Virus record (IMG/VR): IMGVR_UViG_3300049846_000628
Span: 147,202-211,201 of that record
Length of the DNA stretch: 64,000 nt
Reading direction: 5' to 3' (one strand)
Part shown: positions 18,359 to 54,776 of the stretch, piece by piece
How positions within the stretch are numbered: position 1 is the stretch's first letter
How the letters are laid out: every line of letters begins with the position of its first letter
Program-made: the position numbers and the translations under genes
The notes under the pieces: generated by a model
Told to the model about the DNA's origin: nothing
The model's database searches: none
Seen by the model: only the letters and a program-made list of their open reading frames with translations

Positions 18359-18446
18359 TACGAGTGCCTGGATTCGAACCAGGTCAAAGCCGCTAATCTG
18401 GCGGAAAGAGTTTATAAGACTCCTCTGACTACCAAGTCTCACTCGC
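18359..18446 (-). tRNA. atypical tRNA, anticodon TAT (nominal Ile), short D-arm, long variable arm
   Basis: GCGAGTG/CACTCGT acceptor, GAC-TTGGTA-GTC D-arm, GGAGT-CTTATAA-ACTCT, variable arm CCGC-CAGATTA-GCGG, CCTGG-TTCGAAT-CCAGG. Confidence 0.8.
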
Positions 18447-40862: not shown

Positions 40863-40963
40863 AAAAAAGAGGAGGTAAAATCCTCCTCTCATTATACCAC
40901 CAACTCACCTCTCCCACCACAGAGAGGGTCTTCATTCCCAAAGTTACAAGGATATTGAAGACT
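40863..40963 (-). ncRNA. candidate ~100-nt structured small RNA with own promoter and terminator
   Basis: Hairpins GTCTTCA/TGAAGAC and CCTCTCT/GGAGAGG, terminator GAGGAGG-ATTTTA-CCTCCTC-T6. Confidence 0.7.
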
Positions 40964-40968
40964 TGAAT

Positions 40969-40997
40969 ATTATAAGGTATTTTCACAAAAAAGTCAA
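40969..40997 (-). promoter_or_regulatory. sigma70 promoter TTGACT-17-TATAAT
   Basis: Near-consensus; drives the candidate sRNA. Confidence 0.85.
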
Positions 40998-41362
40998 GTG
41001 GTTTGTAAAGACTGAATATAGTCTTTGGAATTTTGAATATCTGCCTCAACAGCAGCAATTTGCTCTTCAAGACGAGTATATTCATCAGTCCCTTCTTCAA
41101 GACCAGAAAGTTCTTCTCTAAGAGTGGTTAAGTATTGTTCATTATTTGTAATTCTTTCTTGATGAGCTGCGATATCCCCTTCTACAGTATAAGGAGGTGG
41201 AACTGGATGAGTAATCGTTGCTTCAATTTCAAATTCTCCACCCTTCTCATCAATAAGAGCCTGGACTTCTTCTAGAGTATATCCAGTATCATTATTACCA
41301 TCAGCAGTCAAATAGTAAAGATGATTTAAAGGTAGAGTAAGCGTTGTCGTTTCAGTTGCCAT
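40994..41362 (-). CDS. acidic coiled-coil hypothetical protein
   Basis: MATETTTLTLPL...; ATAAATA late-like site upstream. Confidence 0.65.
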   Translation of the reverse strand: MATETTTLTLPLNHLYYLTADGNNDTGYTLEEVQALIDEKGGEFEIEATITHPVPPPYTVEGDIAAHQERITNNEQYLTTLREELSGLEEGTDEYTRLEEQIAAVEADIQNSKDYIQSLQTT

Positions 41363-41391
41363 AGTTTTATATTTTGTTTTTTTTTTATTTA

Positions 41392-42144
41392 TCAATATGT
41401 TAAGTGCCTAAGAGAGTTTTTATGCTCTTGTGCAATTAAAAATGGTTGAGATGCAACTTGTTGAAAAACTTCAAAGATATCATTTTGATTTGATTTCCAA
41501 TGAGTTCCACCGCCATCTTGTTTTTGCTTAAAACTTGTGCGGTCTTGATGTCTTTTCACCATCGTCTCAAAATCAAAACGATGAAGGTGTGCAATGTAAC
41601 AATCACGATGATAGTTATTGTTTTTACCTTTCAGTGAGTGAAATCCCCAGTTCCATTCAAGAGAAATTTTAGACATCAATGTTTTATCTTCAGCAGCATC
41701 TTTATACCAGATGTTTCTTTTTTCAAAAATAAAATCTCCAGTTTGAAGCGCAGGTTCATTTTGAATATCTTGAATTACACTATAACCACTGAAGGTTAGG
41801 TATAAGTCATCACCAGCAATAAACTCATCTATTGTTTGATTGAATGGTTTTTCAAGAGAGTATAAAATCTCATCACTCTCTGCAAAAATCACACACTCAT
41901 AATCTTTCAAAAGTTCTTTTTGAAAGTCTTGTGCAATTTTAACTAACCACTCATGGTCATTTACATAATCATTTGCAACAGTTCTTACATTGACTGGAAG
42001 ATTTGAAGTAGACCCATCTGTGGAATGATGGTCTAGAACATAAATGTCTTGATTATTAAAATACTGCTGATAATGCCTTAACCAAATCGGTAAAAAAATA
42101 CTTTCATTTTTTACTGTTGTAAATACGGCACACTTCTTTTTCAT
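41392..42144 (-). CDS. GT-A fold glycosyltransferase (GT2-like)
   Basis: FTTVKNESIFLPIWLRHY...YVLDHHSTDGS...FAESDEI. Confidence 0.75.
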   Translation of the reverse strand: MKKKCAVFTTVKNESIFLPIWLRHYQQYFNNQDIYVLDHHSTDGSTSNLPVNVRTVANDYVNDHEWLVKIAQDFQKELLKDYECVIFAESDEILYSLEKPFNQTIDEFIAGDDLYLTFSGYSVIQDIQNEPALQTGDFIFEKRNIWYKDAAEDKTLMSKISLEWNWGFHSLKGKNNNYHRDCYIAHLHRFDFETMVKRHQDRTSFKQKQDGGGTHWKSNQNDIFEVFQQVASQPFLIAQEHKNSLRHLTY

Positions 42145-43226
42145 TCAATATCTCCAAACTTATTCATTGCTGACTTAATAGTTGCGTCCATGTCCATATA
42201 CTTATACTCACAAAGTCTACCACCAAATATAAAATTGGTCAATATTTTGGACTTGTCTTTGTATAATTGATATAACTTTTGATTATCTTCATTATTAATT
42301 GGGTAATATGGAATCATTCCTTTTTGATAATCTTGTGGATACTCATAAGAAATTATTGTATGAGGTGTATTAATAGATTGAAAATGTTTATGCTCTATAA
42401 TTCGGGTATGATTAAATGATTTATCACAGTAATTAATGACTGCATTGCCTTGAAAATTATCCACAGAATGATATTCTTCTTTGAAGTCTAAAGAACGATA
42501 CTCAAGACTTCCATACTCATAATCAAAAAATTCATCAATACAACCAGTATAAACAACTTGATTTGAAATTGAGTTAAAGTATTCTTTGTTAGAAAAATAA
42601 TCAGTATTAAGTTTGACTTCAATATTATCCAACATCTTGTTTATCATTTGAGTATATCCATCCGTTGGAATACCTTGATACTTATCGTTGAAGTAATTAT
42701 TGTTAAAAGTAAATCTCAATGGAAGTCTTTTAATAATAAATGCGGGAAGTTCTATTGCTGATTTACCCCATTGCTTTTCTGTATATTCTTTAATCAAAGT
42801 GTTGTAAATATCAGACCCAACCAAATATAATGCTTGCTCTTCTAAATTGGTTGGATTAATTTGAAGTGTCTGTTTTTCAATAATTTTTTTTGCTTCTTGT
42901 GGATTTGTAACTCCCCATAACTCATAAAAAGTATTCATATTAAAAGGAAGTGAATATAACTTCCCCTTTGAAAATGCTTTGGGTGAATTGATAAAAGAAT
43001 TAAAAGACGCAAAACGATTTACAAAGTTCCATACTTTTTCATTACTTGTATGAAAAATATGTGCTCCGTATTTGTGTATATGAATGTCTTCTATCTTTTC
43101 TGTATAACAATTACCACCAATATGAGACCTTTTATCAATGACTAAACAAGACTTACCACTATCAGCAGCAAGTCTTGCGAATGTTGCACCGAATAAACCA
43201 GCACCAACAATTAGATAATCATACAA
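42141..43226 (-). CDS. glf: UDP-galactopyranose mutase
   Basis: IVGAGLFG, HIGGNCY, HKYGAHIFHT, YTEKQWG, IIKRLPLR, YQGIP, RIIEHKHF, PYYPIN, GRLCEYKYMDM. Confidence 0.95.
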   Translation of the reverse strand: MYDYLIVGAGLFGATFARLAADSGKSCLVIDKRSHIGGNCYTEKIEDIHIHKYGAHIFHTSNEKVWNFVNRFASFNSFINSPKAFSKGKLYSLPFNMNTFYELWGVTNPQEAKKIIEKQTLQINPTNLEEQALYLVGSDIYNTLIKEYTEKQWGKSAIELPAFIIKRLPLRFTFNNNYFNDKYQGIPTDGYTQMINKMLDNIEVKLNTDYFSNKEYFNSISNQVVYTGCIDEFFDYEYGSLEYRSLDFKEEYHSVDNFQGNAVINYCDKSFNHTRIIEHKHFQSINTPHTIISYEYPQDYQKGMIPYYPINNEDNQKLYQLYKDKSKILTNFIFGGRLCEYKYMDMDATIKSAMNKFGDIE

Positions 43227-45074
43227 TTATCCTTTCCTCCACAACTCCTTAGAGAATTGAACCCAGTCTTTCACTCTGGTTTCCCAACTATAATACTCAT
43301 TACAAATTTCAACCTGTCTTGTATTATCAAACTCACCATTACGATACTCAGTAATGGTTCTCTTGAGTTCTCTAGTAAATCGTTCAATATGTTTTTGACG
43401 GTCTGGAATAAAACCATAGTGTCTTGCAAACCCAAGACCAGTCTCAGGAAGTGCAGCAAGGTTAGAAGAAAGCACAGAGCATCCAGCACACAATGCTTCA
43501 ATCATACAAATACAAGATGTTTCCATAAAGTAAGTTGGATAAGCAAAGATGTGAGTATTCATCAGTTGCTCACGAATCTTAGAATTATTTGTGCGTGTGT
43601 GACGAACAACTCTCTTATCCTGATTTGCAAGACTTAAACAATACCGAAGAAACTGTTCTTCTTGTGGATTAATATGTGAGTATTCGTAAGTTTGAAGACC
43701 CTGTTGGAATTGTTTTTTCCTTTCATCAGGGTCAAGTTCATGGAAAATGTGAAGTTCAAAGTCTTCTTCTGGAATGAGTTTAATACTTTCAAGAAGAATA
43801 TCCAATCCACGAATTGGATTTGAATGGAACATCAGTTGCAGTTTTCCTTCTGGTTTCTTATGAACTGGGAATGGTTGCGTTGCATTTTTCAGAACATAAC
43901 ACTTCTCCATCGGCAGTTGAAGTCTTTCACCAAACCTCTCATACTGCCAGTTAGAGACAAACACGTATGCCTTAAAGTGTTTCTGGAATTCCTTATCTAA
44001 TAGTCGTTCAATACCCTCTTCCATATGGTGAGGGTGTAACCACACGATATTAGAACTATCGGGAGACAAAGTATTATCACCTGGAATGACTGCCCAGTGC
44101 CAGTCAGCAAGGTCAGGAGCAGCAGGAAGAACATAGTCTTGCCAGGAGCGACCCATAAGTTCGGTGCCACCTACACCATCAGGGTTGAGAACTGCTTCCA
44201 GAAGTGGAGGCATATTATTATGAAGATATTCTGGTTTTGTAATTACTTCTGGTTGCATCATTTCATAAAACTCCTTTGGAAATATTTTTGTAATCAGACT
44301 TCTTAATTCTTCTGGAAAGTTACTAAAGTTGTAGTCTTTAAAGTTTTCATTCCTACCGAACAAATCTTTTTTAGATTCAATCGCATTCAAAATATTACTA
44401 TCATTAATTATAGCATCTTTATTGAATTCTTGGTGTGCAAATGATTGTAATTTGGTTCTAATTCTTTCGGTGTCACCAAAATATGAGAAGTGCCACCCAC
44501 CTTGTTCAACAAAAGGAAACTCATATGCTTTGTATCTTAAGAAATCACATCCCTTCTCAGTCGCATTTGAAACTGTAGTGAAGACAGTTCCTCCCCAAAG
44601 ACTATCGTGAAAGGTCTTAAAGTTATAATAAAACAAATCACACTTTGCGGTTGCAACAAAATCTCTTTCAAGTCTTTGTTGACTCAAATACTGAATTGCT
44701 TCTGCCCTTGGAATCTCATCAGCATCACTCACCATAAACAAATCATCTGGTGAAAACTGTTTCAAACCTTCTATGATATGTGCTCGTTGACCCCTCTCAA
44801 TCTTCCAAAATCCAGATTCAAAATTACATTCATCACGATTTGAAAAGTCATAATCAGTAATATCTGGTTCATACTTCAGACGAATAATCTTTCTACGAAT
44901 ATCTTCATCAAACTCACCAAGAACCTCATCAAGATAATAAGGTTTTGGATTACCTGCGTGAGTATAGTTGCACTCACTAATTACAAAGTAATCAACAACA
45001 TTCTTAAGATAATTCAATCGCAGTTTGACTATATCAAACTCATTAAAGAATAAAAAACTATCAATGACTTTCAT
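43227..45074 (-). CDS. fusion: GT17 (MGAT3-like) domain plus GT-B glycosyltransferase
   Basis: N: DSFLFFNEFDIVKLRL...VDYFVISE...SDADEIP...GGWHFSYFGD...SFAHQE; C: GGTE...SNWQ...RGLDIL...HIFAYPTYFMETSCICMIEALCAG. Confidence 0.85.
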   Translation of the reverse strand: MKVIDSFLFFNEFDIVKLRLNYLKNVVDYFVISECNYTHAGNPKPYYLDEVLGEFDEDIRRKIIRLKYEPDITDYDFSNRDECNFESGFWKIERGQRAHIIEGLKQFSPDDLFMVSDADEIPRAEAIQYLSQQRLERDFVATAKCDLFYYNFKTFHDSLWGGTVFTTVSNATEKGCDFLRYKAYEFPFVEQGGWHFSYFGDTERIRTKLQSFAHQEFNKDAIINDSNILNAIESKKDLFGRNENFKDYNFSNFPEELRSLITKIFPKEFYEMMQPEVITKPEYLHNNMPPLLEAVLNPDGVGGTELMGRSWQDYVLPAAPDLADWHWAVIPGDNTLSPDSSNIVWLHPHHMEEGIERLLDKEFQKHFKAYVFVSNWQYERFGERLQLPMEKCYVLKNATQPFPVHKKPEGKLQLMFHSNPIRGLDILLESIKLIPEEDFELHIFHELDPDERKKQFQQGLQTYEYSHINPQEEQFLRYCLSLANQDKRVVRHTRTNNSKIREQLMNTHIFAYPTYFMETSCICMIEALCAGCSVLSSNLAALPETGLGFARHYGFIPDRQKHIERFTRELKRTITEYRNGEFDNTRQVEICNEYYSWETRVKDWVQFSKELWRKG

Positions 45075-45704
45075 TTATTTCTTCTCGTAGACGTAACAAT
45101 CATAACCAGCAAGTACATTTTGATTTCCCAGTGTTTCTCTCACCGCACGATAAGCACTACTTGCATTTGAATTATAATAATGATCTAGTTCATAACTATT
45201 TCCAGTTGGTCTCATACCCCAAGAAGTGGGTTGAGGTGGAAAATAATAATCGTGTCCCGCAAGAACACCACCTCTTTTTACTTTAGGCAACCAAGAAATA
45301 ATATCATCTTTAATGTCCTCATATTCGTGAGAACCATCAATAAAAACAAAATCAAGACTTTCATCCTGAAACTTTTGAACTGCTTCCATAGAAGACATTC
45401 TCATATCTTGGTAATAACCTTCAACAGATTTCATATTATCTTTAAAGATATTATAAAGACGTGGTAGTTCTGGATTGTTTTGATGTTCTACACTTCCTTC
45501 AAAAGTATCTACACAATAGAAGTCAATTTGCTTTCCAGAATTAGCAATCTCAACACACATAAAAGCAGAAGACTTACCTTTCCATGACCCAATTTCAACA
45601 AATTTACTACCAGAAGGAAACCTGTTTACCATATCCTTATAAAGTTCTGGATAAGTAAACCAGTCTTCACCAAACTCAGGTTGATGGTAAATATGAGGGA
45701 TCAT
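45075..45704 (-). CDS. class I SAM-dependent methyltransferase (Methyltransf_24-like)
   Basis: VEIGSWKGKS...DTFEGS...LDFVFIDGSHEYE...GGVLAGHDY. Confidence 0.88.
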   Translation of the reverse strand: MIPHIYHQPEFGEDWFTYPELYKDMVNRFPSGSKFVEIGSWKGKSSAFMCVEIANSGKQIDFYCVDTFEGSVEHQNNPELPRLYNIFKDNMKSVEGYYQDMRMSSMEAVQKFQDESLDFVFIDGSHEYEDIKDDIISWLPKVKRGGVLAGHDYYFPPQPTSWGMRPTGNSYELDHYYNSNASSAYRAVRETLGNQNVLAGYDCYVYEKK

Positions 45705-46543
45705 AAAACCTCCTTTAAGAAGTTTTCCATTGGAGACTTCTTAAAGATTTCAAGACCTTTTTCTGCTTGTGCGTCAAGTTCTTCTGGTTTCTTGAGAAGT
45801 CTGTAAGCAGTATCCACAAAACGATTGTAAGTTGAAGTGAATACCGTGTCTTCCATATAATCAGGGAAGTCTGTATCAGGGTTTCTTTCTGCAAGAACTG
45901 GAACTTTGTTTTGAATCAAATGAGATACACGAACCATTTCAAAGATTTGATTATCGTGATTATGAAGGTTGATGACTAACTTTGCTCTCTTGATATATTC
46001 ATCTCGTTCATCACCATAAGTTGATTGAATATGAACAAAGTTCAGTTTTGGATTGTTTGAAAACTGCTCCATAATATGAACTCTTCGTGGTGAAGGGCAT
46101 CCATAAAACAGAATATCAATATCACGGTCTTGTGGTTTATTTCTTTCAAAGTATGAAATCTCTGGAACATAACCAATCTTACAGTACTTAATATTCTCCA
46201 CACCTGCCTTTTGAAGAACCTCTACATTACGAAGAGAATAATCCCATACTTCAAGACCACGATACTTACGACACCAACGCATACACTCTGGTTGGTCTTT
46301 CATTTGTTCCAGAGAATAAACAATTGTTCCTTTTGGAATATCATGTCTTACCACATCAACAGGACAGTGATGCATTCCAAACACGATATTTCTTCGGTCT
46401 GATGCAAATTGATTTGTGCTATTTGTTACATCATGTCCCAATCGTTGTAGAGAAAAAAACATTGCTGCTTCAATCTCATGAAAGACTTGTGCGTGAACAT
46501 CAAATCCATTATCAGGAACAATTCTTACTAAATTAAATTTCAC
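45701..46543 (-). CDS. GT-B-like glycosyltransferase
   Basis: YSLEQ...VWDYS...DIDILFYG...RAKLVINLH...FEMVRVSHL; probable GTG start at 46543. Confidence 0.65.
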   Translation of the reverse strand: MKFNLVRIVPDNGFDVHAQVFHEIEAAMFFSLQRLGHDVTNSTNQFASDRRNIVFGMHHCPVDVVRHDIPKGTIVYSLEQMKDQPECMRWCRKYRGLEVWDYSLRNVEVLQKAGVENIKYCKIGYVPEISYFERNKPQDRDIDILFYGCPSPRRVHIMEQFSNNPKLNFVHIQSTYGDERDEYIKRAKLVINLHNHDNQIFEMVRVSHLIQNKVPVLAERNPDTDFPDYMEDTVFTSTYNRFVDTAYRLLKKPEELDAQAEKGLEIFKKSPMENFLKEVL

Positions 46544-47966
46544 GGATAAACTCTCCAAAATTCTTTTTAATTTCATTAATGAGATTTATATCTCCAGCAA
46601 CTACACCCAATCCATTACAATGCCCAAAGTTTGTTTTAGGTAAATTAATTTCTTTAAAGAATCTACTCACACCAAACTTAGGGTCATCAACCATAGTATC
46701 ATGCATTAATATTATACCATTTTCTTTTACAAATGGAATCCACTTTTCAAAATCATTTCTGACTGCTTCATAAGTATGAAGACCATCAATATGCAAAATA
46801 TCAATTGGTTTATTCCAAGTTTTAACAACATCGTCAAAGAACCCTTTGATAATTGTAACATTATTCAATTCAAGTTCTTTAACTTTATCTCTCACATATT
46901 CATAAGTATCTCTTTCTCCAGCACAAATATCTCCTTCAAAACTATCAATACCATAAACTTGACCGATTTCTGGAAGTGCAAAACAGAATGTTGAGTATCC
47001 ATAATCCACACCCAAATCAACAATTGTTTCTGGTTGCTTTCTACGAACTAACCAATCTGCAAACTGTCTATGGTCTCTCCAGTTGAATAAGTTTTTACTT
47101 CCAACTTCCATTAATACATCTAACTTATTCCTATTATATTTCGTCTCATCTTTTTCAACATCATCACGATACATTTCTGGAGGATAATAAGTGAAGTATC
47201 TTTCAAGACCTTGATTATCGTATTGATGATGACGACGATAATGGAAACAATGTTGCTTTGGAAGTCCTGTAGCCATCCATAATTCAAAACAATAACGATA
47301 GTTCTGTAACTCTCTCATCATTGCTTCTACATCCATATACTCTTCAATTTTGAGTGGATGCTTCAGTTTGCGGATGTAATCATTTCGTGCCCACCAGAAG
47401 TTTCCTGCATAATGTTGAACAACAAAATCAAGTTTGATGTCGTGTCTTTCTACCCAGTCAACACCACAACAATCATAACCTTCGTCTAGTTTTGCAATAC
47501 AGTCTTCCCACTTTTCAATATTATAATACTGCATATAGTGTCTCCAGTCCTTGATCGCACCAGGAATATGGGTTGAATAAGAACTCATTCCTTTATTATG
47601 GAAGTAGAAGACATAACCATCCTCTTGAAGACAATGCTCATAAATCTTTGCAAGTGTTTGACCTTCATAAAGATTTGGTTGTTCCCCCACACCTCTCATA
47701 TCAATGATGTTTACAAATGGGAATCTGTCTTTGATATATCCAGTCACCATTTGGTCATATGAATGTCCTGTTTTGGAATTATAAAGACCAAGAGGTAGGG
47801 TAATACACATATTAATGGTTGCCTTATCAGCAAGACCAGTGGACTTCAACAGACTCATCTGTTCATCCACCCACCAAATCCACATATTGTTGGTGTCTGG
47901 AATATAAAGATGATAGAAAACTGCGATAGTTTTTGGATTTTTCTTTTCGTTAGTATAATTCAACAT
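46533..47966 (-). CDS. fusion: glycosyltransferase-like N-domain plus SAM methyltransferase
   Basis: N: FYFHNKG...HYAGNFWWARNDYI; C: IVDLGVDYGYS...IDILHIDGLHTYEAV...GIILMHD. Confidence 0.75.
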   Translation of the reverse strand: MLNYTNEKKNPKTIAVFYHLYIPDTNNMWIWWVDEQMSLLKSTGLADKATINMCITLPLGLYNSKTGHSYDQMVTGYIKDRFPFVNIIDMRGVGEQPNLYEGQTLAKIYEHCLQEDGYVFYFHNKGMSSYSTHIPGAIKDWRHYMQYYNIEKWEDCIAKLDEGYDCCGVDWVERHDIKLDFVVQHYAGNFWWARNDYIRKLKHPLKIEEYMDVEAMMRELQNYRYCFELWMATGLPKQHCFHYRRHHQYDNQGLERYFTYYPPEMYRDDVEKDETKYNRNKLDVLMEVGSKNLFNWRDHRQFADWLVRRKQPETIVDLGVDYGYSTFCFALPEIGQVYGIDSFEGDICAGERDTYEYVRDKVKELELNNVTIIKGFFDDVVKTWNKPIDILHIDGLHTYEAVRNDFEKWIPFVKENGIILMHDTMVDDPKFGVSRFFKEINLPKTNFGHCNGLGVVAGDINLINEIKKNFGEFIREI

Positions 47967-48655
47967 ACAATATTACTCTTAATGTGTCCAACAATAATGT
48001 TGGGGTCTACATAAACCTTATGACCCTGCTCTGCGACCCTCTCACAGAAGTATAAGTCTTCTCCAAGTGGAAGTTCATAAGTTACTCCATCTACCTCTTG
48101 AATGACCTTCCCAAGACCAAACCAGGGTCTTTTGAGTGATTCAAAGACACCAGACTTGATGCACATAAATCCCATACCAACACCATAAACTTCAATCGGT
48201 TCTCCTAGTTGTTGAAGAAGTTGAAGTTCTTCTCTTGTGGTTGGTTTAAAATCATTTTTTTGTTTGTGTATCATTGCATCATTTCCCTGTGCCTCAAAGT
48301 ACACAGCAGAAATAACTGACTTATCACTTGCATAAAGTCTTAGAAACTGCTCTGGATTCCAGACAATATCACTATCAATACAGAAGATTTTATCATAAGT
48401 GTATTGACCTTTACCTGGTGCAGAATTAAAGACTTCTAGATTTCTTGAACCTGTAATCGTTGCTTCTCTTGCATTTGTAATAATAGAAGCATACTCGTTC
48501 TGGTATAACCAAGAAATATTATTTGCTTGAAGTGTATGAATCGTTGCGAGCAGACACTTTACATAGTCCGCACACATTGAATTACCTGGAGTTGTAATCA
48601 CCACATTAAAATGTGGTTTTGTCTCTTGTTGCTGTGAATTAGAATAATTTAGCAT
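47960..48655 (-). CDS. GT-A fold glycosyltransferase (GT2-like)
   Basis: FCIDSDIVW (DxD), GMGFMCIKSGVFE, LGEDLYFC, GHIK; ATG at 48655. Confidence 0.8.
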   Translation of the reverse strand: MLNYSNSQQQETKPHFNVVITTPGNSMCADYVKCLLATIHTLQANNISWLYQNEYASIITNAREATITGSRNLEVFNSAPGKGQYTYDKIFCIDSDIVWNPEQFLRLYASDKSVISAVYFEAQGNDAMIHKQKNDFKPTTREELQLLQQLGEPIEVYGVGMGFMCIKSGVFESLKRPWFGLGKVIQEVDGVTYELPLGEDLYFCERVAEQGHKVYVDPNIIVGHIKSNIVC

Positions 48656-48660
48656 AAGAT

Positions 48661-49383
48661 TTAAATAGTAATCATTTTCTGGTGACCGACACGAACTTTT
48701 GGATGAACCCAAATATCAAACCCATACTTGCGGAAGTCTTCACACATAGAGATGTCTTCAGAGCAGACATCTTCAAGAATAGTCCCATCTGGTTTCTTGA
48801 GTTGAATCACTCTCGGAACAAACCAAGGATAAGGAATTTTTTCATAGACACCTTTCTTAATCAACATCCAACCAAAACCACAATAATCTACTTTAAAAGG
48901 TTCTGTTCTGCGAGACATATCTTCAACAGTCTCATACTTATTAGAACCTTTCTCATAAAGTTCTTGTTGATTCATTCTTTCTACAACAGTAGATTGATTG
49001 GAAAGAATCCCACCATTTGATTGAACATACCAACCAGCAGCAATATCCTTATTCATTTTAAGAAGTTCAATCAGGTCTTCTGTCTTGAAGATAATATCAC
49101 TATCAATCCACATAATATAATCATAAGGAACCTGTCCTCTAAAAGGAGTGAGCATCGTTCCTGCATAATTATCTGCCTGCAAACAATCAGTTCGTGCGTG
49201 ATTCACCATTGAACTGTATTGTTGGGAGATATAAAAATTAATTCCTTGTTGATTCAGGTCAAACAGTAATCTTATGAACTGAGTCATAAAAGTTCCAGAA
49301 TACATCAATCCTGGAAGACAGAAAGCAATGGTTTTTCCTTTAAGACTTGTACTTGTCGTTTGATTTGTATAATTCAGGGGCAT
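48661..49383 (-). CDS. GT-A fold glycosyltransferase (GT2-like), paralogue of the neighbour
   Basis: MWIDSDIIF (DxD), GFGWMLIKKGVYE, SEDISMC, GHQK. Confidence 0.8.
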   Translation of the reverse strand: MPLNYTNQTTSTSLKGKTIAFCLPGLMYSGTFMTQFIRLLFDLNQQGINFYISQQYSSMVNHARTDCLQADNYAGTMLTPFRGQVPYDYIMWIDSDIIFKTEDLIELLKMNKDIAAGWYVQSNGGILSNQSTVVERMNQQELYEKGSNKYETVEDMSRRTEPFKVDYCGFGWMLIKKGVYEKIPYPWFVPRVIQLKKPDGTILEDVCSEDISMCEDFRKYGFDIWVHPKVRVGHQKMITI

Positions 49384-49428: not shown

Positions 49429-52400
49429 TTACCACCAGGTAATTTTTACGTATCCATTTCCACCATCACCACCAACACCAAATTTGTTTTGTTCTATGGA
49501 GTATCCACCTCCACCTCCACCACCACCACGAGTTCCATTTCCTCCGTGTCCTGCTGCTGATGCTGTGGTGTCTGATGCTGTTATAAGTCCACCACTAGTA
49601 CCACCAGATACAAAAAGATTATTACCAAAAATAATATTATTTAAAACAAAAGAAACCCCAGTAGTTCTAGCAATCCACACAATAGTATCAGTTGAAGTTC
49701 TCAATTGAGAAGAATCACCACATAAAACATAGATATTATTCCCATATGTAAGTCCCCTTAAAGTATTTCCAGAAAATCCAACAGTTCTTAATTGCCAAGT
49801 GATTGCATCAGTTGAGATATTTACAGTCATGGGGAAAGTACCACCACCAGCAACATAGAGATTGTTTGCGTAGGTGATCGCAGTAATACCATTAGAACCA
49901 AAACTAGCAGTTCTTAAGGTCCAGGTGATTGTATCTGTTGAGGTGTTTAATACTCCAGAAGCACCACCAGCAACATAAGTATTGTTTCCAAAAGTGATAT
50001 TATTAATAGCATTACCACCAAAACCAGAAGTTCTTAAGGTCCAAGTAATTGTGTCTGTTGATGTACTTAACCTTCCACTAATACCACCAACAATATGAAT
50101 ACCATTACCAAAAGTAAGAGTATACCAAGTACCACCATACCCAGAAGTTCTTAACTCCCAAGTGATTGCGTCTGTTGAAGTGTTTAATGTTCCACCATTA
50201 TCTGCAGTGATATAAGTATTGTTTGCAAAAATAATAGCATTAATACTCGCAGTAGAATTCCCAGAAGTTCTTAAGGTCCAAGTGATTGCGTCTGTTGAAG
50301 TATTTAATGTACCATTAGCACCAGCAGCAACATAAGTATTGTTTCCAAAAGTGATATTATTAATAGCATTACCACCAAAACCAGCAGTTCTTGCATACCA
50401 ACTATTAATTCCAGTGCTCAAAGCACCTCCACCACCTCCACCAGAACCATAAGACCCAGTATAACTTCCAGGAATACCATCAGCACCATTACCACCAGTA
50501 TTACTTCCACCACTCGTTGTAGCAGTATTTCCATAATAATAAGAAACTGAATTACCTCCTGTATTGGTATTATATGCTCCTCCTCCACCACCAGAAACTT
50601 GGAATGCACTTGCTTGTGTAGAAGAGTTTGAAGTTGCTAATGCTGATAATCCAGCACCACCAGCACCACCAGCAGTAGTATAAAGATTATTTGTTGTTGC
50701 AACTAAAGATGAACCTTGGGTTCCTGCTGTGGTTGCTGTATCACTTGCTCCACCACCAGTAGCAGCAGTTAATTGATAAGTCGCAGTACCTGTTGGAGTA
50801 TTTCCAATCCAAGTAACACTTGATCCACTACCAGAACTTCCACCACCAGAACTAACACCACCAGCAACAAAGACTGTTCCGTATGTGAGTGCGTTGATGT
50901 TTTGTGCCTTAAAGAGTGAGGTTCTTTGCGTCCAAGTGATTGTGTCTGTAGATGATGCAAGAACTCCAGAAGCACCTGCTGTTATGTAGAGATTGTTTGT
51001 GTATGAGAGGGCATTTAATTGTGTGGTGGTTCCTGAAGTTCTTAAAGTCCAAACAATTGTATCTGTTGAGGTTACTATGACTCCAAGAGTACTACCAGCA
51101 ACATAAAGATTATTTCCAAATATTAATCCTAATATAGTATTAATTATTCCAGAAGTTCTTAAAGTCCATTGAATTGCGTTTGTTGAAGTGTTTAATACTC
51201 CAGAATCACCAGCAACAACATAAGTATTATTTGCAAAAGTGAGAGCATAAAAAGTTTGTGCAGTATTTGAAGTTCTTAAAGTCCAGGTGATTGCGTCTGT
51301 TGAAGTAAGTAATCTTCCAGCAGGGCAACCAGCAACGTAAGTATTATTTGCAAAAACAAGAGCATTATGAGATACAGTAGTACCAGCAGTTCTTAAAGTC
51401 CAAATAATTGTGTCCGTTGAAGTTATCAGTCTACCAGCATTATCACCTGCAACATAAGTATCAGTAGGACTATTACCATAAGTTAACGATGAAAAAGTTG
51501 TAATTGAAGAATAACCAGTTGTTCTAATTCTCCAAGTAACTCCATTATCAGTAGATACTGTAATTCCAGATGCCGTAAAAAGTGCAACATAGTATGGATT
51601 ATTATACAATAGTTTTTGAACTGAATAAGTAAGACCAGATCCACCAGGAACAGTCTCCCATACAATTCCATCAGTACTCGTACTCATTCCACGATTGTTT
51701 CCACCACGACCACCAGCACCAACAGTCACGGTCATCGTAGAAGCACTTCCAAGTTCTCCACGACGAATTAACCAAGAATTATAAGCACCAGAACCACCAC
51801 CACCACCAGAACCTAATGTTCCCGTAACTCTTCCTGATGCTCCGCCTCCACCACCACCGATTGCTTCAATGTAAAACTGGGTTGCTGTTGGAGGAATAAA
51901 GAATGTTCCAGAACTTGTGAATTCTTGAGAACCTTTGTATGATACTGGGTCTTGTGGTGTGGTTGTTGTAGCATTTATGGGTTCCCAGATTTTTTGAGTT
52001 GCTTGGGAAGTTATTATTTCACCACCACCAACAAATGCAGTATAAGCATTGTTTGCAAAAACTATTCCATTAATAGAATTAGTAACTAAAGAAGTTCTTA
52101 TGGACCAAATAATAGTATCTGTTGAAGTAATTAATGTTCCATTAGAACCACCAGCAACGTAAGTATTATTTCCATAAGTAAGATTTCTTATATTTTGACC
52201 AGTACCAGTAGTTCTTAAGGTCCAAGTGATTGCATCGGTTGAGGTACTTAATTTTCCAGAACCACCACCAGCAACATAAGCGTTATTAAGAAAATTGAGA
52301 ACGATAATAGCATCACCACCAAAACCAGAAGTTCTTGCGACCCATACAATTCCATTTATTGAAGTCTTTATAATTCCAGCAACACCACCAGCAACATAAG

Positions 52401-52971
52401 TATTATTTGCAAAAGTAACACTTTGAATATATTGAGAACCACCAAAGTTAGAAGTTCTTAAGGTCCAAGTAATAGCATCTGTTGAAGTGTTTAATACTCC
52501 ACTATCACCAGCAGCAATATAAAGATTATTAGCAAAAGTAAGAGCATAAATGATAGTAGTAGCAAAACCAGAAGTTCTTAAGGTCCAAGTGATTGCGTCT
52601 GTTGAAGTGTTTAAGATACCAGAAAAACCACCAGCAACATAAAAAGTTGAATAAGTAAGAGCATTGATATTAGAGAGACCAAATCCAGAAGTTCTTGAAG
52701 TCCAGGTAACTGCGTCTGTTGAGGTATTCAATCTTCCAGAAACACCACCAGCAACATAAAAAGTTGTGTAAACATTAGCACCTAAACCTGACACAGAACC
52801 AGAAGTCCTCAACACCCAATACTGAGCACCAGGATAAACTGCTAAAAATCTTCCAGCATTTCCAGTTAAACTTGGAAGAGCATTATCATCAAGATATTGA
52901 CGATTTACAGCATCAGTCGTACCAGATACTACACTTACACTAGTAACCTTATTGCTGTCTAATGTTGCCAT
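49429..52971 (-). CDS. fibre/adhesin with beta-propeller repeats inside a glycine-rich domain
   Basis: DAVNRQYLD fibre motif; STDAITWTLRT repeats; C-terminal GGNGYVKITWW. Confidence 0.8.
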   Translation of the reverse strand: MATLDSNKVTSVSVVSGTTDAVNRQYLDDNALPSLTGNAGRFLAVYPGAQYWVLRTSGSVSGLGANVYTTFYVAGGVSGRLNTSTDAVTWTSRTSGFGLSNINALTYSTFYVAGGFSGILNTSTDAITWTLRTSGFATTIIYALTFANNLYIAAGDSGVLNTSTDAITWTLRTSNFGGSQYIQSVTFANNTYVAGGVAGIIKTSINGIVWVARTSGFGGDAIIVLNFLNNAYVAGGGSGKLSTSTDAITWTLRTTGTGQNIRNLTYGNNTYVAGGSNGTLITSTDTIIWSIRTSLVTNSINGIVFANNAYTAFVGGGEIITSQATQKIWEPINATTTTPQDPVSYKGSQEFTSSGTFFIPPTATQFYIEAIGGGGGGASGRVTGTLGSGGGGGSGAYNSWLIRRGELGSASTMTVTVGAGGRGGNNRGMSTSTDGIVWETVPGGSGLTYSVQKLLYNNPYYVALFTASGITVSTDNGVTWRIRTTGYSSITTFSSLTYGNSPTDTYVAGDNAGRLITSTDTIIWTLRTAGTTVSHNALVFANNTYVAGCPAGRLLTSTDAITWTLRTSNTAQTFYALTFANNTYVVAGDSGVLNTSTNAIQWTLRTSGIINTILGLIFGNNLYVAGSTLGVIVTSTDTIVWTLRTSGTTTQLNALSYTNNLYITAGASGVLASSTDTITWTQRTSLFKAQNINALTYGTVFVAGGVSSGGGSSGSGSSVTWIGNTPTGTATYQLTAATGGGASDTATTAGTQGSSLVATTNNLYTTAGGAGGAGLSALATSNSSTQASAFQVSGGGGGAYNTNTGGNSVSYYYGNTATTSGGSNTGGNGADGIPGSYTGSYGSGGGGGGALSTGINSWYARTAGFGGNAINNITFGNNTYVAAGANGTLNTSTDAITWTLRTSGNSTASINAIIFANNTYITADNGGTLNTSTDAITWELRTSGYGGTWYTLTFGNGIHIVGGISGRLSTSTDTITWTLRTSGFGGNAINNITFGNNTYVAGGASGVLNTSTDTITWTLRTASFGSNGITAITYANNLYVAGGGTFPMTVNISTDAITWQLRTVGFSGNTLRGLTYGNNIYVLCGDSSQLRTSTDTIVWIARTTGVSFVLNNIIFGNNLFVSGGTSGGLITASDTTASAAGHGGNGTRGGGGGGGGYSIEQNKFGVGGDGGNGYVKITWW

Positions 52972-53000
52972 TGTCTTCTATCTTCCATAAGGGTATTTAT

Positions 53001-54776
53001 TTACCACCAGGTAATCTTCACGTAACCATCACCACCATTTCCACCAGAACCAAAAGTAGAACCGATAGAAGCACCACCACCTCCACCACCACCACGAGCA
53101 CCATTTCCACCAGTTGCTGCAATAGAAACACTTGCACCTCCACCACCTCCACCAGAACCATAAGGAAGTCCAGAGATTACAATAGCATTAGTTCCATTTG
53201 TTCCTGTAGAGTCTCCACCAGATGCTGATGTTGTGATTCCATATACGTTGATTACTCCACCAGAACCACCAGCACTTGAAGTAGAACCAGCACCACTTCC
53301 ACCACCTGTTGGTTGGAATTGATTAGTTTGTGCTGTTGCTGTGATACCTATTCCTGGAGATTGATTTGCCCCAGAAAGTCCTGCAGTGGTATAAAAAGAA
53401 CTTGATTGACTTGTGAGTTGTGCTGCTCCTGCTGCTGTTCCAGAACCACCAGATGCTGTGATTGTATAAGTTCCTCCAGGTCCAGTCCAGGATACTGTGG
53501 TTCCTGCTCCTGCTGAACCTGTTGCTGCGTCTGTGGTTGCTCCTGCTCCACCAACACCAGGATTGATTGTGAGGTTTGATGATACAATTGCTTTTGGAAT
53601 ATACCAGGAAGTATAAGAACCTGCACCTCCTCCTGCTCCTGATGCTTGGGAGTATGAGGTGTGTAATGAAGTTGGACCACCTGAACCTGAAAAAAGGAAT
53701 GTATTGTTTCCATAAGTAGAACTTATTAATAATGTCGTACTAACAAAAGTTCTTAAGGTCCAAGTGATTGCGTCTGTTGAAGTATTGAGTCTTCCCGAAT
53801 CACCACCAGCAACATAAATGTTGTTTCCAAAGGTAAGAGTACGAATATTATTAGCACCAAAACCAGAAGTTCTCAGAGTCCAAGTGATTGCGTCTGTTGA
53901 GGTATTTAAGACTCCACTATTACCACCAGCAACATAAAAAGTTGTATAAGTAAAAACATTAATAGTAGTATTAAACCCAGAAGTTCTTAAGGTCCAAGTG
54001 ATTGCGTCTGTTGAAGTGTTTAAGATACCAGAAAAACCACCAGCAAGAAAAATACCATTTCCAAAACCAACAGAAGACGAACCTCCAATACCTCCACCAG
54101 TTCTCAGAGTCCAATTTATGGTATCGGTTGATGATTCTAAAGGTAGACCAGTACCAGTGGCGAGGTAAATACTATTTCCAAAGGTAATTCCAGTTACCAT
54201 ACCTGCAGTAGTTCTCAATATCCAAGTGATTGTATCTGTCGATGTAGTTAAAAATACATTTCCACCAACAAAATAATTACCATTAAGATACTCTGCAGAA
54301 GATGGACTAGTATTGAATACAGCAGTTCTCAAAATCCAAGAAATTGCATCTGTTGATACGACTATTGTGTTAGAATTTACTCCAGAAATAAACAGAGAAT
54401 TTCCAAAAGTAACATTACCACCACCAGAACTAGATATGTTTATAGCAGTTCTAATTGTCCAAGTAACTCCTGCCTGTGCTGTTGTCTGCCCCGCACTTCC
54501 TCCACCGCCAGCACCAACTGCTTCAATAAACAAAAGGTTTGTATAACTTGGAACTGTAAAAGTCTGTGCTCCAGTTGATGTAAATTCCTGATAGTTAGAA
54601 ACATAATCCCAAGAAAGACTTGTTCCATCAGTTGTAAGTAAAAACTTACCAGCATTACCAGTTTGTGATGGTAAGGGTTGTGCATTAGCATCTACATAAT
54701 CCTTATTGACTACATCAGTTGAAGCAAAGACTGTTGTAGTAATACCAGAAATAAAATTAGAACCTGCGGTAGTCAT
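53001..54776 (-). CDS. fibre/adhesin with beta-propeller repeats, paralogue
   Basis: DVVNKDYVD, LPSQTGNAGKFL, QEFTSTG...IEAVGAGGGG, STDAITWTLRT repeats, GGDGYVKITWW. Confidence 0.8.
   Translation of the reverse strand: MTTAGSNFISGITTTVFASTDVVNKDYVDANAQPLPSQTGNAGKFLLTTDGTSLSWDYVSNYQEFTSTGAQTFTVPSYTNLLFIEAVGAGGGGSAGQTTAQAGVTWTIRTAINISSSGGGNVTFGNSLFISGVNSNTIVVSTDAISWILRTAVFNTSPSSAEYLNGNYFVGGNVFLTTSTDTITWILRTTAGMVTGITFGNSIYLATGTGLPLESSTDTINWTLRTGGGIGGSSSVGFGNGIFLAGGFSGILNTSTDAITWTLRTSGFNTTINVFTYTTFYVAGGNSGVLNTSTDAITWTLRTSGFGANNIRTLTFGNNIYVAGGDSGRLNTSTDAITWTLRTFVSTTLLISSTYGNNTFLFSGSGGPTSLHTSYSQASGAGGGAGSYTSWYIPKAIVSSNLTINPGVGGAGATTDAATGSAGAGTTVSWTGPGGTYTITASGGSGTAAGAAQLTSQSSSFYTTAGLSGANQSPGIGITATAQTNQFQPTGGGSGAGSTSSAGGSGGVINVYGITTSASGGDSTGTNGTNAIVISGLPYGSGGGGGGASVSIAATGGNGARGGGGGGGASIGSTFGSGGNGGDGYVKITWW

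What the first reader, a model, noticed from the sequence alone, without database searches (positions are those of the whole stretch)
41392..49383. Eight-gene galactofuranose/methylated-glycan pathway directly downstream of Ser/Thr-rich fibre genes
Seen: contiguous, mostly overlapping genes for two GT2-like paralogues, a GT-methyltransferase fusion, a GT-B-like enzyme, a methyltransferase, a GT17-GT-B fusion, Glf and another GT-A enzyme. They follow about 15 kb of extremely Ser/Thr-rich fibre genes on the same strand. No flippase, polymerase or membrane-anchored enzyme is evident. Known: Glf makes UDP-Galf, and Methyltransf_24 enzymes often cap glycans. Inference: a soluble cytoplasmic system building an O-methylated Galf-containing glycan on virion proteins (or on DNA), rather than host LPS conversion. 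That would be an undescribed phage glycosylation pathway.
Basis: partly seen in the sequence, partly recalled or inferred. Interest (0 to 1): 0.72.

Follow-up and report, generated by a model that had tools for sequence, protein, structure and literature searches.

The report
Cyanophage glycan-building cassette behind tail fibres
An uncultured freshwater T4-like cyanophage carries eight intact, membrane-free sugar-transferase, methyltransferase and UDP-galactofuranose genes that always sit directly behind its propeller-type tail-fibre genes; they most likely decorate virion fibres with a methylated glycan, but altering the host surface is not excluded.

Summary
Eight contiguous minus-strand genes (41392-49383) encode two GT-A paralogues, a GT-A-like (DUF8361)/O-methyltransferase fusion, a GT-B-like protein, a second O-methyltransferase, a GT17/GT-B fusion, a bona fide UDP-galactopyranose mutase and a Glf-linked GT-A. 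Catalytic motifs are intact. No gene has a transmembrane segment.

The window is the end of a 211-kb T4-like cyanomyovirus (psbA, psbD, gp32) from freshwater.

Five genes (g8-g7-g6-g5-GT-B) form a core under strong purifying selection. In 26 of 26 informative related loci they start right after the last Asp-box-propeller fibre gene. The second methyltransferase, Glf, its partner GT and the GT17 domain are swappable accessory modules.

No T4-type late promoter or convincing terminator separates fibre f1 from the cassette, so late read-through is likely. Known routes to a DNA acceptor are absent (ThyA homologue and C5-methylase; the TET/JBP search was uninformative). The genome has no flippase, polymerase or lipid-carrier enzyme.

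Best reading (about 0.4): cytoplasmic glycosylation of virion fibres. Main rival (about 0.35): remodelling of host envelope glycans.

Glycosyltransferase clusters in this hypervariable fibre region of cyano- and pelagimyophages, and virion glycosylation in mycobacteriophages, are already described. This is a new variant, not a new kind.

The parts
60093..64000 (-). Fibre f4, C-terminal part. It has a Peptidase_S74 intramolecular chaperone at its end. The gene runs over the record end and its N-terminal 355 aa lie at G000:C1:3-1067.
54791..60091 (-). Fibre f3, 1766 aa. It has 27 Asp-box-like propeller blades and a Gly-rich C-terminus ending GYVRISWY.
53001..54776 (-). Fibre f2, 591 aa. It has 6 Asp-box-like blades and a Gly_rich_2 C-terminal domain ending GYVKITWW.
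52994..53000 (-). T4-type late-promoter motif ATAAATA, 29 nt upstream of the f1 start codon. It is the last such motif before the cassette.
   Evidence: 35 of 74 genome copies lie 20-39 nt upstream of an ATG ORF
49429..52971 (-). Fibre f1, 1180 aa. It has 16 Asp-box-like blades and two Gly-rich domains.
48661..49383 (-). g8: GT-A glycosyltransferase of the phrog_1574 family. It has a D94-S-D96 motif and the N-terminal tag MPLNYTN. It starts 45 nt after the f1 stop.
47960..48655 (-). g7: a paralogue of g8 (27% identical) with a D113-S-D115 motif. The probable true start is Met20 (MLNYSN); the ORF as listed extends to 48712.
46533..47966 (-). g6: a fusion of DUF8361 and Methyltransf_24.
- DUF8361 (residues 1 to about 280) has a GT-A fold, no DXD, and a conserved YxFHNKG motif.
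- The Methyltransf_24 half is a cation-dependent sugar O-methyltransferase fold.
- The N-terminal tag is MLNYTN.
45701..46576 (-). g5: GT-B-like (Glyco_trans_1_2-like) protein from a narrow viral family. In other phages it is fused to DUF8361.
45075..45704 (-). g4: stand-alone Methyltransf_24 O-methyltransferase. It is an accessory gene, absent from most relatives.
43227..45074 (-). g3: a fusion of a GT17 domain and a GT-B domain.
- The GT17 domain (residues 1 to about 270, D117-A-D119) is accessory.
- The GT-B domain (residues from about 276 to 615, E518-x7-E526) is part of the core.
42141..43226 (-). g2: UDP-galactopyranose mutase (Glf). Accessory module.
41392..42144 (-). g1: Glyco_tranf_2_4 GT-A with an E89-S-D91-E motif. 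Its orthologues (at least 49% identical) are always next to glf, so it is a candidate galactofuranosyltransferase. Accessory module.
40994..41362 (-). o133: a small acidic coiled-coil-like protein of unknown function. It always follows the cassette and has its own ATAAATA motif (41386-41392) 30 nt upstream of its ATG.
40867..40890 (-). First strong intrinsic terminator downstream of the cassette. It belongs to a conserved putative small RNA.

Best explanation
The locus is a late-expressed, entirely cytoplasmic glycan-assembly cassette of a lytic T4-like freshwater cyanomyovirus.

Proposed mechanism:
1. A conserved five-gene core builds a methylated oligosaccharide from host nucleotide sugars and SAM. 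The core is two GT-A paralogues (g8, g7), the GT-A-like/O-methyltransferase fusion g6, the GT-B-like g5 and the GT-B domain of g3.
2. Swappable accessory modules vary its outer part. These are the GT17 domain of g3, the extra O-methyltransferase g4, and the pair Glf plus g1.
3. In this genome Glf converts host UDP-Galp to UDP-Galf, and g1 is the candidate galactofuranosyltransferase.
4. The most likely acceptor is the set of phage Asp-box-propeller tail fibres encoded immediately upstream. They would be glycosylated in the cytoplasm as they are made.

Status of each step:
- Shown: gene content, intact motifs, folds, synteny, selection, and the absence of membrane and DNA-acceptor machinery.
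- Inferred: co-transcription, the order of enzyme action, the donor sugars other than Galf, and above all the acceptor.
For: Enzymes real and intact:
- DXD, EX7E and SAM motifs are present.
- dN/dS of core genes is 0.03-0.14, against 0.4-0.7 for the fibres.

Sugar methylation:
- The methyltransferase domain has Z of 19 to cation-dependent O-methyltransferases. These include the mycobacterial sugar 1-O-methyltransferase MeT1 and the rhamnosyl O-methyltransferase SpnH.
- There are weak RMNT_CmcI and TylF hits across the family.

Galf use:
- g1 orthologues lie next to glf in 5 of 5 independent contexts.

Link to fibres:
- With the fibre as an independent query, g8 starts just after the last fibre gene in 26 of 26 loci that extend far enough. 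The gap is about 50 bp in most of them and up to about 520 bp.
- The link persists in a relative whose g6 is only 57% identical. There the upstream gene is a 4380-aa propeller fibre.
- The same GT family has a second copy just upstream of the baseplate module here and in P-SSM2 and S-SRM01.

Late co-expression:
- ATAAATA motifs mark late genes genome-wide (35 of 74 copies lie 20-39 nt before an ATG). One precedes f1 and none lies between f1 and g1.
- There is no strong terminator before 40890.
- A 100%-identical contig in a freshwater RNA library bridges the f1/g8 junction.

Soluble and self-contained:
- None of the eight proteins has a transmembrane segment, and the whole genome has no candidate flippase, polymerase or lipid-carrier enzyme.

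Precedent:
- OMT plus three GTs glycosylate the capsid and tail tube of cluster O mycobacteriophages (PMC11600133, citing Freeman 2023).
Against: - No direct evidence for any acceptor.
- The fibres' Ser/Thr content is explained by structured Asp-box blades, so it does not argue for O-glycosylation.
- Adjacency to receptor-binding genes is also typical of receptor-modifying genes (my knowledge: T5 llp, P22 and epsilon15 conversion genes).
- Peripheral, TM-less GTs are normal in O-antigen synthesis, and the host could supply carrier lipid and export.
- The same genome carries a classical 'LPS-like' 12-gene cluster that is not next to the fibres.
- The RNA-library contigs may derive from contaminating DNA.
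- A weak terminator-like hairpin lies inside g8 at 49316-49293.
Confidence: 0.4

Rival explanations
1. Host envelope remodelling. The soluble enzymes act at the inner face of the host membrane on host lipid-linked O-antigen, LPS-core or other envelope glycan intermediates. They add methylated and Galf residues, and host machinery exports the product. This alters the very receptor that the adjacent fibres recognise, giving superinfection exclusion or less loss of progeny on debris.
For: - This is the long-standing published hypothesis for cyanomyovirus and pelagimyophage 'LPS' clusters (PMC1079782, PMC3037559, PMC7029224, PMC12801897).
- The GT families involved (GT2-like, GT4-like, GT17, Glf) are typical of polysaccharide synthesis.
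- A 63%-identical g1 sits beside a glf (63% identical to g2), with a Methyltransf_24 gene next to them, in a contig that looks cellular.
- Modular gain and loss of terminal enzymes resembles O-antigen serotype variation.
- A second LPS-like cluster lies elsewhere in the genome.
- Receptor-modifying genes next to receptor-binding genes are known in other phages (my knowledge).
Against: - No initiating phosphoglycosyltransferase, flippase, ABC transporter, polymerase or ligase is present in the phage.
- The cassette has no promoter of its own and sits behind a late promoter. That is late for changing the surface of a cell about to lyse.
- The core enzymes are highly conserved while the fibres, and presumably the receptors, diversify fast.
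- None of the seven GT/MT proteins matches an NCBIfam bacterial family.
Confidence: 0.35
2. DNA hypermodification. The glycan, including galactose supplied through Glf, is attached to modified bases of phage DNA to evade restriction. This is as proposed for the galactosyl-glucosyl-5-hydroxycytosine of Rhizobium phage RL38J1.
For: - A phage Glf is part of the proposed DNA-glycosylation pathway of RL38J1 and the Pootjesviridae (PMC13326640).
- Glf occurs in many Rhizobium and Aeromonas T4-like phages.
- PHROGs labels the methyltransferase family 'DNA methyltransferase'.
Against: - The whole genome has no thymidylate-synthase homologue (5hmC/5hoC/5hmU synthase).
- It has no C5 DNA methyltransferase.
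- No TET/JBP match was found, but that search rang in no control genome, so it does not show absence.
- The methyltransferases have the fold of small-molecule and sugar O-methyltransferases, not of DNA methyltransferases.
- Glf is accessory and absent from most relatives that keep the core.
- An eight-enzyme methylated glycan on DNA has no precedent.
Confidence: 0.03
3. Another acceptor. The cassette makes a free or differently anchored product. Examples are a soluble polymethylated oligo- or polysaccharide, a glycolipid or small-molecule glycoside, or a glycan on a non-fibre protein such as capsid, baseplate, o133 or a host protein.
For: - The closest solved relative of the methyltransferase is MeT1 of the cytoplasmic methylmannose-polysaccharide pathway.
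- o133 always follows the cassette and has its own late promoter.
- g8, g7 and g6 share a unique N-terminal MLNY(T/S)N tag of unknown role.
Against: - No positive evidence for such a product.
- It does not explain the invariant position behind the fibre genes better than the two main readings do.
Confidence: 0.12

Closest known systems
'LPS / cell-wall modification' gene clusters of T4-like cyanomyoviruses and pelagimyophages (P-SSM2, S-SSM7, S-SM2, S-SCSM2R; the hypervariable tail-fibre region of pelagimyophages)
   Same: - Same virus group (Kyanoviridae-like; gp32 75-76% identical to S-SRM01 and P-SSM2).
- Multi-gene GT and sugar-nucleotide clusters in the hyperplastic region that also holds fibre genes.
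- Function never tested (PMC1079782, PMC3037559, PMC7029224, PMC12801897).
- The second cluster of this genome (GT10, GT11, Gmd, DegT) is of exactly that type.
   Different: - This cassette has a different enzyme set: phrog_1574 x2, DUF8361-MT, g5, GT17/GT-B, with or without MT-Glf-GT2_4.
- It is fixed immediately behind propeller fibres in a freshwater clade.
- It has no counterpart in cultured phage genomes. There was no megablast hit. g6 matched only through its methyltransferase part. The fibre type is absent from isolates.
Mycobacteriophage virion glycosylation (Che8, Corndog / cluster O: an O-methyltransferase followed by three GTs)
   Same: - Phage-encoded soluble GTs plus an O-methyltransferase.
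- No membrane machinery.
- The glycan is put on virion proteins in the cytoplasm (PMC11600133, PMC12619734, both citing Freeman et al. 2023).
   Different: - The host is an actinobacterium.
- The acceptors there are capsid and tail-tube C-termini, not fibres.
- No sequence relationship was shown here beyond a weak match of the methyltransferase to cluster-K-type phage methyltransferases.
- Glycosylation here is not demonstrated.
Giant-virus capsid and fibril glycosylation enzymes, e.g. chlorovirus PBCV-1 A064R (GT-GT-methyltransferase) and Mimivirus fibril GTs
   Same: - Virus-encoded cytoplasmic assembly of methylated glycans on virion proteins.
- GT and methyltransferase domains fused in one polypeptide (my knowledge).
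- A Mimivirus GT-A (R699, 9dyt) is among the structural matches of DUF8361, with Z of 10.2.
   Different: - Those are eukaryotic viruses.
- No specific homology was established; the fold match is generic GT-A.
Glf-dependent DNA glycosylation proposed for Rhizobium phage RL38J1 (Pootjesviridae)
   Same: A phage-encoded UDP-galactopyranose mutase in a T4-like phage.
   Different: That pathway needs a ThyA-family 5hodCMP synthase, a nucleotide kinase and a dCTPase. This genome has no ThyA homologue.
Seroconversion systems of temperate phages (gtrABC, O-acetylases, polymerase inhibitors)
   Same: A phage changes surface glycans; the genes often lie near tailspike or fibre genes (my knowledge).
   Different: Those use membrane proteins (GtrA, GtrB, GtrC) and act in lysogens. 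This is a T4-like lytic phage with no candidate membrane enzyme of that kind.

Membership tests
UDP-galactopyranose mutase (Glf) | Full-length match above the curated equivalog threshold | tested here: met
   TIGR00031 scores 405 bits against a cut-off of 303.75. Pfam GLF gives E 9e-80 over positions 2-203 of 203.
UDP-galactopyranose mutase (Glf) | N-terminal FAD-binding Rossmann motif and end-to-end similarity to solved mutases | tested here: met
   NAD_binding_8 gives E 2e-22 and the VGAGLFG motif is present. E is 1e-139 to 4mo2 and 1e-135 to E. coli 1i8t over residues 1-356. Positions 59 and 168 are His and Lys as in E. coli UGM, not Arg and Arg as in the C. jejuni UNGM sequence. The link of these residues to specificity is from memory.
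UDP-galactopyranose mutase (Glf) | Interconversion of UDP-Galp and UDP-Galf | not testable with these tools
   Needs an enzyme assay.
GT-A glycosyltransferases (g8, g7, GT17 domain of g3, g1) | DXD (or EXD) metal/nucleotide-sugar motif after a hydrophobic strand | tested here: met
   g8 has IDSD, g7 has IDSD, g3 has SDAD, and g1 has AESDE.
GT-A glycosyltransferases (g8, g7, GT17 domain of g3, g1) | Family-level profile match | tested here: met
   - g3 matches GT17 at E 4e-20.
- g1 matches Glyco_tranf_2_4 at 29.6 bits against a cut-off of 27.5.
- g8 and g7 match phrog_1574 at E 5e-72 and 7e-47, plus GT PHROGs.
- Atlas neighbours are GT2/Anp1.
- The folds of g8, g7 and g1 were not modelled.
GT-A fold for DUF8361 (N-terminal domain of g6) | Nucleotide-diphospho-sugar transferase fold | tested here: met
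   The AF2 model has pTM 0.82. Foldseek gives E 1e-5 to GtrB and SpsA. VIA gives Z of 10-11 to many GT-A enzymes. TM-scores are only about 0.4, so it is a divergent member.
GT-A fold for DUF8361 (N-terminal domain of g6) | DXD motif | tested here: not met
   There is no DXD. A near-invariant YxFHNKG sits at the end of the strand where DXD normally lies. It may be metal-independent or may use another chemistry; activity is untested.
Retaining GT4-type GT-B (C-terminal half of g3; g5) | Glycos_transf_1-type profile above threshold and an EX7E motif | tested here: inconclusive
   - g3 has E518-x7-E526 and matches phrog_2170 glycosyltransferase at E 1e-20, but its Pfam hits are below cut-off.
- g5 has only Glyco_trans_1_2 at 19 bits against a cut-off of 25, plus Atlas neighbours.
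Methyltransf_24 / cation-dependent class I O-methyltransferases (g4, C-terminal domain of g6) | Profile above threshold, SAM-binding motif I, and the class I fold | tested here: met
   Scores are 77.6 and 76.1 bits against a cut-off of 26.3. Motif I and IDGxH are present. The g6 domain has Z of 19-20 to O-methyltransferases, including MeT1.
Phage virion-glycosylation system (mycobacteriophage type) | Phage-encoded soluble GTs, with or without an OMT, linked to structural genes | tested here: met
Phage virion-glycosylation system (mycobacteriophage type) | Glycan detected on virion proteins | not testable with these tools
   Needs glycoproteomics. The phage is uncultured.
gtrABC-type or Wzx/Wzy/ABC-type host O-antigen machinery encoded by the phage | Membrane-embedded flippase, bactoprenol GT, polymerase, ligase, or an initiating phosphoglycosyltransferase | tested here: not met
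   A hydropathy scan of all ORFs of at least 60 aa found, besides psbA/psbD, only a shadow ORF and an unexamined 115-aa ORF, which is too short for such enzymes. Use of host machinery cannot be excluded.
DNA base glycosylation pathway | An enzyme that creates a hydroxyl acceptor on DNA or nucleotides (ThyA-family hydroxymethylase/hydroxylase, or C5-methylase plus TET/JBP) | tested here: not met
   No PF00303 match and no PF00145 match. No PF12851 match either, but that search rang in no control genome, so it is weak.

The most novel reading that the evidence does not exclude
The cassette is the first tail-fibre glycosylation system of a T4-like (Gram-negative/cyanobacterial) phage. A conserved cytoplasmic five-enzyme line includes a DXD-less GT-A/O-methyltransferase fusion and three enzymes that share an MLNY(T/S)N docking tag. 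It coats Asp-box-propeller receptor-binding fibres with a methylated glycan. The outer residues (Galf, extra methyl groups, a GT17-added sugar) are swapped between strains. This would give the 20-year-old puzzle of cyanophage 'LPS genes' a virion-directed answer.
Probability: 0.35. Interest if true: 0.8.

Novelty: new variant of a known kind. Interest (0 to 1): 0.55.

Why it matters
- Large glycosyltransferase clusters in marine and freshwater T4-like phages have been called 'LPS genes' since 2005. They were even suspected to be stuffer DNA, and no function has been tested.
- This locus offers a tractable case. The core is small, strongly selected and membrane-free. It is invariably coupled to one fibre type and probably co-transcribed with it.
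- If the fibres are the acceptor, phage receptor-binding proteins of abundant aquatic phages would carry strain-variable glycan coats. That would bear on host range, grazing or adsorption losses, and defence evasion.
- If the host surface is the acceptor, the locus would be a lytic-phage receptor-editing system genetically coupled to its own receptor-binding genes.
- Either way it defines DUF8361 as a GT-A-like domain and proposes a Glf-linked GT subfamily as galactofuranosyltransferases.

Tried and rejected
- Megablast of the 8-kb cassette against cultured phage genomes gave no match.
- PDB sequence searches for g3 and g8, and a DUF8361 profile, gave nothing useful.
- Fold search with the whole g6 model was swamped by the methyltransferase domain, so the N-terminal domain was folded separately (then 70-77).
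- A complex prediction of g5 with the DUF8361 domain, prompted by their fusion in other phages, returned no verdict. It is no evidence either way.
- A 518-aa six-TM ORF at G000:C1:74358-75914 was rejected as a shadow of a 724-aa gene on the opposite strand.
- Distant cellular homologues of g1 (31-44% identical; Actinomycetota, Planctomycetota and others) are not next to glf (0 of 37). The Glf link therefore holds only for the orthologous subfamily.
- The idea that phrog_1574 is a universal cyanomyovirus core gene was dropped. It is found in 107 phage records, against several hundred cyanophage records with gp32.
- A 2OG-Fe(II) oxygenase neighbour of the canonical copy, as in P-SSM2, was not found next to the copy in this genome.
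- Rfam found nothing in 38-54 kb.
- Freeman et al. 2023 could not be read.

Full report
**What the window is**

The window is the last 64 kb of a 211,201-bp IMG/VR virus record rated complete.
- The genome carries psbA and psbD.
- Its gp32 is 75-76% identical to those of Synechococcus phage S-SRM01 and Prochlorococcus phage P-SSM2.
- It also has T4-type baseplate, tail and fibre genes, ThyX, PhoH and a glutaredoxin.

It is therefore a T4-like cyanomyovirus. RNA libraries that hold near-identical sequence are freshwater and riverine. The nearest cultured relative by gp32 is a freshwater phage.

The record is circularly permuted. Fibre f4 runs over the record end and starts at G000:C1:1067.

**The observation**

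Eight minus-strand ORFs fill 41392-49383, abutting or overlapping one another. Their assignments are as follows.

- **g8 and g7.**
  - They are paralogues, 27% identical, of PHROG 1574.
  - That family is found in 107 cultured-phage records, nearly all cyanophages.
  - They also hit glycosyltransferase PHROGs.
  - Each has a canonical DSD motif after a hydrophobic strand.
- **g6, C-terminal domain.**
  - It is a Methyltransf_24 domain.
  - In the model it superposes on cation-dependent O-methyltransferases at Z of 19-20.
  - The matches include the mycobacterial sugar 1-O-methyltransferase MeT1 (6g7d) and the rhamnosyl O-methyltransferase SpnH.
- **g6, N-terminal 280 residues.**
  - They are the recently defined DUF8361.
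  - Folded alone (pTM 0.82), the domain is a divergent GT-A fold: Foldseek E of 1e-5 to GtrB and SpsA, and VIA Z of 10-11 to many GT-A enzymes.
  - It has no DXD.
  - A near-invariant YxFHNKG motif occupies that place.
- **g5.**
  - It has only a sub-threshold Glyco_trans_1_2 match.
  - Its atlas neighbours are of that family.
  - It belongs to a family of 70 clusters, almost all from this phage clade.
- **g4.** A stand-alone Methyltransf_24 enzyme.
- **g3.** It fuses a GT17 domain (E 4e-20, motif SDAD) to a GT-B half (phrog_2170, EX7E motif).
- **g2.**
  - It is a genuine UDP-galactopyranose mutase.
  - It scores above the NCBIfam equivalog cut-off.
  - It has E of 1e-139 to solved enzymes over its full length.
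- **g1.** A Glyco_tranf_2_4 GT-A, just above the Pfam cut-off.

No segment in any of the eight proteins approaches transmembrane hydrophobicity.

Only 'GT-B-like' for g5 rests on weak evidence.

**The fibres**

- f1 to f3 have S+T of 27-30% and Gly of 14-19%.
- Read directly, they are tandem ~40-residue blades carrying an Asp-box-like motif (consensus NTSTDAITWTLRTSG). There are 16, 6 and 27 blades respectively.
- The blades alternate with glycine-rich domains, and the proteins end in GYVKITWW or a close variant.
- Pfam sees DUF6242, Kelch and Gly_rich_2.

The Ser/Thr richness is thus a property of a structured beta-propeller repeat. It is not a mucin-like linker, and it is not in itself a sign of O-glycosylation.

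This fibre type is absent from cultured phage genomes.

**Comparative anatomy**

The GT17/GT-B fusion was used as a query against viral contigs, and the fibre f2 was used independently. The same layout recurs throughout an uncultured clade: fibres, g8, g7, g6, g5, GT-B, o133, glutaredoxin, DUF6433, ThyX.

- In all 26 fibre-seeded loci that extend beyond the last fibre gene, g8 begins just after it. The gap is about 50 bp in most loci and up to about 520 bp. The other seven loci end inside fibre sequence.
- The stand-alone methyltransferase g4, Glf and g1 are missing from most relatives.
- The GT17 domain of g3 is present in some relatives and absent in others.
- Some relatives carry an extra ~230-aa gene between g7 and g6.
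- The Glf-g1 pair reappears in a subset: L038, L100/L101 and L112.
- A more distant relative (g6 57% identical) has an even larger GT/methyltransferase array directly behind a 4380-aa fibre of the same propeller type.
- Elsewhere, DUF8361 is fused to a g5-type domain in 541-aa proteins. This is a Rosetta-stone link between g6 and g5.

Selection:
- Core genes evolve under strong purifying selection (pairwise dN/dS of 0.03-0.14).
- The fibres diverge fast (57-66% identity, dN/dS of 0.4-0.7).

The cassette is functional. It is not stuffer DNA.

**Galf branch**

- Orthologues of g1 (49-83% identical) lie beside or within one gene of glf in five independent contexts. These include a 351-kb jumbo-phage contig and a contig that looks cellular.
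- The wider family (31-44% identical, mostly Actinomycetota) is never within 6 kb of glf (0 of 37).

g1 is therefore the best candidate for the galactofuranosyltransferase. This is an inference from subfamily-specific gene pairing.

**Expression**

- The T4-type late-promoter core ATAAATA occurs 74 times in the genome. Thirty-five copies lie 20-39 nt upstream of an ATG ORF of at least 100 aa.
- In the window the motif precedes f1 (at 53000), two other tail or fibre genes, and o133. None lies between f1 and the end of g1.
- The 45-nt f1-g8 spacer has neither a promoter of that type nor a terminator.
- The first strong terminator is at 40890-40867. Strong sigma70-type promoters appear only after o133.
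- A weak terminator-like hairpin inside g8 (49316-49293) is a caveat.
- In a freshwater metatranscriptome, contigs identical to the window cover g5 and g6-g7-g8, and one bridges the g8/f1 junction. DNA carry-over cannot be excluded.

Late read-through from the fibre promoter is thus likely but not shown.

**What the acceptor is not likely to be**

DNA:
- The genome has no thymidylate-synthase-family enzyme.
- It has no C5 DNA methyltransferase.
- No TET/JBP match was found, but that search's controls were silent.
- These are the known sources of a hydroxyl acceptor for DNA glycosylation. They include the 5-hydroxycytosine route in which a phage Glf has been implicated (PMC13326640).
- The genome does encode a Mom-family protein, a different kind of DNA modification.

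A self-sufficient polysaccharide export pathway:
- A hydropathy scan of all ORFs found no flippase, polymerase, ligase or initiating transferase candidate.

**What the acceptor may be**

Two readings remain.

1. Virion proteins, above all the fibres made from the same transcript.
   - This fits the invariant coupling to one fibre type at several depths of divergence, the likely late co-expression, and the membrane-free enzyme set.
   - A second copy of the g8 family sits next to the baseplate module here and in P-SSM2 and S-SRM01.
   - Mycobacteriophages provide a precedent: an O-methyltransferase and three GTs modify capsid and tail tube (PMC11600133).
   - From memory, chlorovirus and mimivirus virion glycosylation by GT-methyltransferase fusion proteins is a further precedent.
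2. Host envelope glycans.
   - This is the standing hypothesis for cyanophage 'LPS genes' (PMC1079782, PMC7029224, PMC12801897).
   - O-antigen GTs are normally peripheral proteins without TM segments.
   - The host can supply carrier lipid and export.
   - Receptor-modifying genes are often placed next to receptor-binding genes.
   - The modular gain and loss of outer enzymes resembles serotype variation.
   - The same genome has a classical fucose/perosamine-type cluster of 12 genes (GT10, 2x GT11, FUT8-like, GT2, FkbM methyltransferase, DegT, Gmd, Fcl-like) at G000:C1:14381-25735, away from the fibres.

I rate reading 1 at about 0.4, reading 2 at about 0.35, another acceptor at about 0.12 and DNA at about 0.03.

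**Novelty and verdict**

- The gene content and position are real and non-random.
- The kind of feature is published: GT clusters in the hypervariable fibre region of T4-like aquatic phages, with function unknown. Phage virion glycosylation as a phenomenon is known.
- New here:
  - this specific, tightly fibre-coupled cassette of a freshwater clade;
  - its core/accessory structure;
  - the assignment of DUF8361 as a DXD-less GT-A-like domain fused to a sugar O-methyltransferase;
  - a Glf-linked GT subfamily;
  - a shared N-terminal MLNY(T/S)N tag on three consecutive enzymes.
Two of its supports are weaker than stated: the Ser/Thr richness, and the description of the cassette as an eight-gene pathway.

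Noticed in passing
window 40865-40997, minus strand: A conserved putative small RNA of about 100 nt lies between o133 and the glutaredoxin gene.
- It has a near-consensus sigma70-type promoter (TTGACT-17-TATAAT), three hairpins and an intrinsic terminator.
- It is conserved in eight related phages, with compensatory changes in hairpin 2 and the terminator stem.
- It has no Rfam match.
   Followed up: partly
G000:C1:14381-25735 (outside the window; loci L085, L079-L082): A second, 12-gene glycan cluster on the same strand. It holds two GT11, a GT7C-like, an FkbM methyltransferase, GT10, GT2, a FUT8-like, a DegT aminotransferase, a GDP-fucose-synthase-like epimerase and GDP-mannose 4,6-dehydratase. 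This is the classical cyanomyovirus 'LPS' cluster.
   Followed up: partly
window 3-773, minus strand (the gene continues upstream of the window): A dTDP-glucose 4,6-dehydratase-like SDR. It scores below the equivalog cut-off and stands apart from both glycan clusters.
   Followed up: partly
window 48640-48655, 47949-47966 and 49363-49383 (starts of g7, g6 and g8): Three consecutive enzymes begin with the same hexapeptide M(P)LNY(T/S)N.
- The Leu codons differ, so the selection is at the peptide level.
- The motif occurs at no other ORF start in the genome.
- It is conserved in relatives but absent from the canonical third paralogue and from the P-SSM2 and S-SRM01 homologues.
- It may be a docking or targeting tag.
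   Followed up: partly
window 32398-32988, minus strand: A Mom-family protein gene (E 1e-24) overlaps the end of gp32. This suggests a Mom-type adenine modification of the phage DNA; a relative has the same arrangement.
   Followed up: no
G000:C1:127653-128315 (locus L031 7642-8406): A third paralogue of g8 (47% identical). It lies about 1.6 kb upstream of the gp25/gp6 baseplate genes, with a 196-aa ORF and an AdoMet decarboxylase gene between, and an HNH endonuclease gene upstream. This is the position of PSSM2_106 in P-SSM2 and gp186 in S-SRM01.
   Followed up: partly
window 18156-18446, minus strand: Three clustered tRNA genes (Leu-taa, Met-cat, Ile-tat) lie near several late-promoter motifs.
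   Followed up: no
window 40994-41362: o133 is a small acidic protein with a Thr-rich N-terminus and a coiled-coil-like C-terminus.
- It always follows the cassette. In some relatives the called gene at that position is only 65 aa.
- It has its own late-promoter motif.
- It has no family match.
   Followed up: partly
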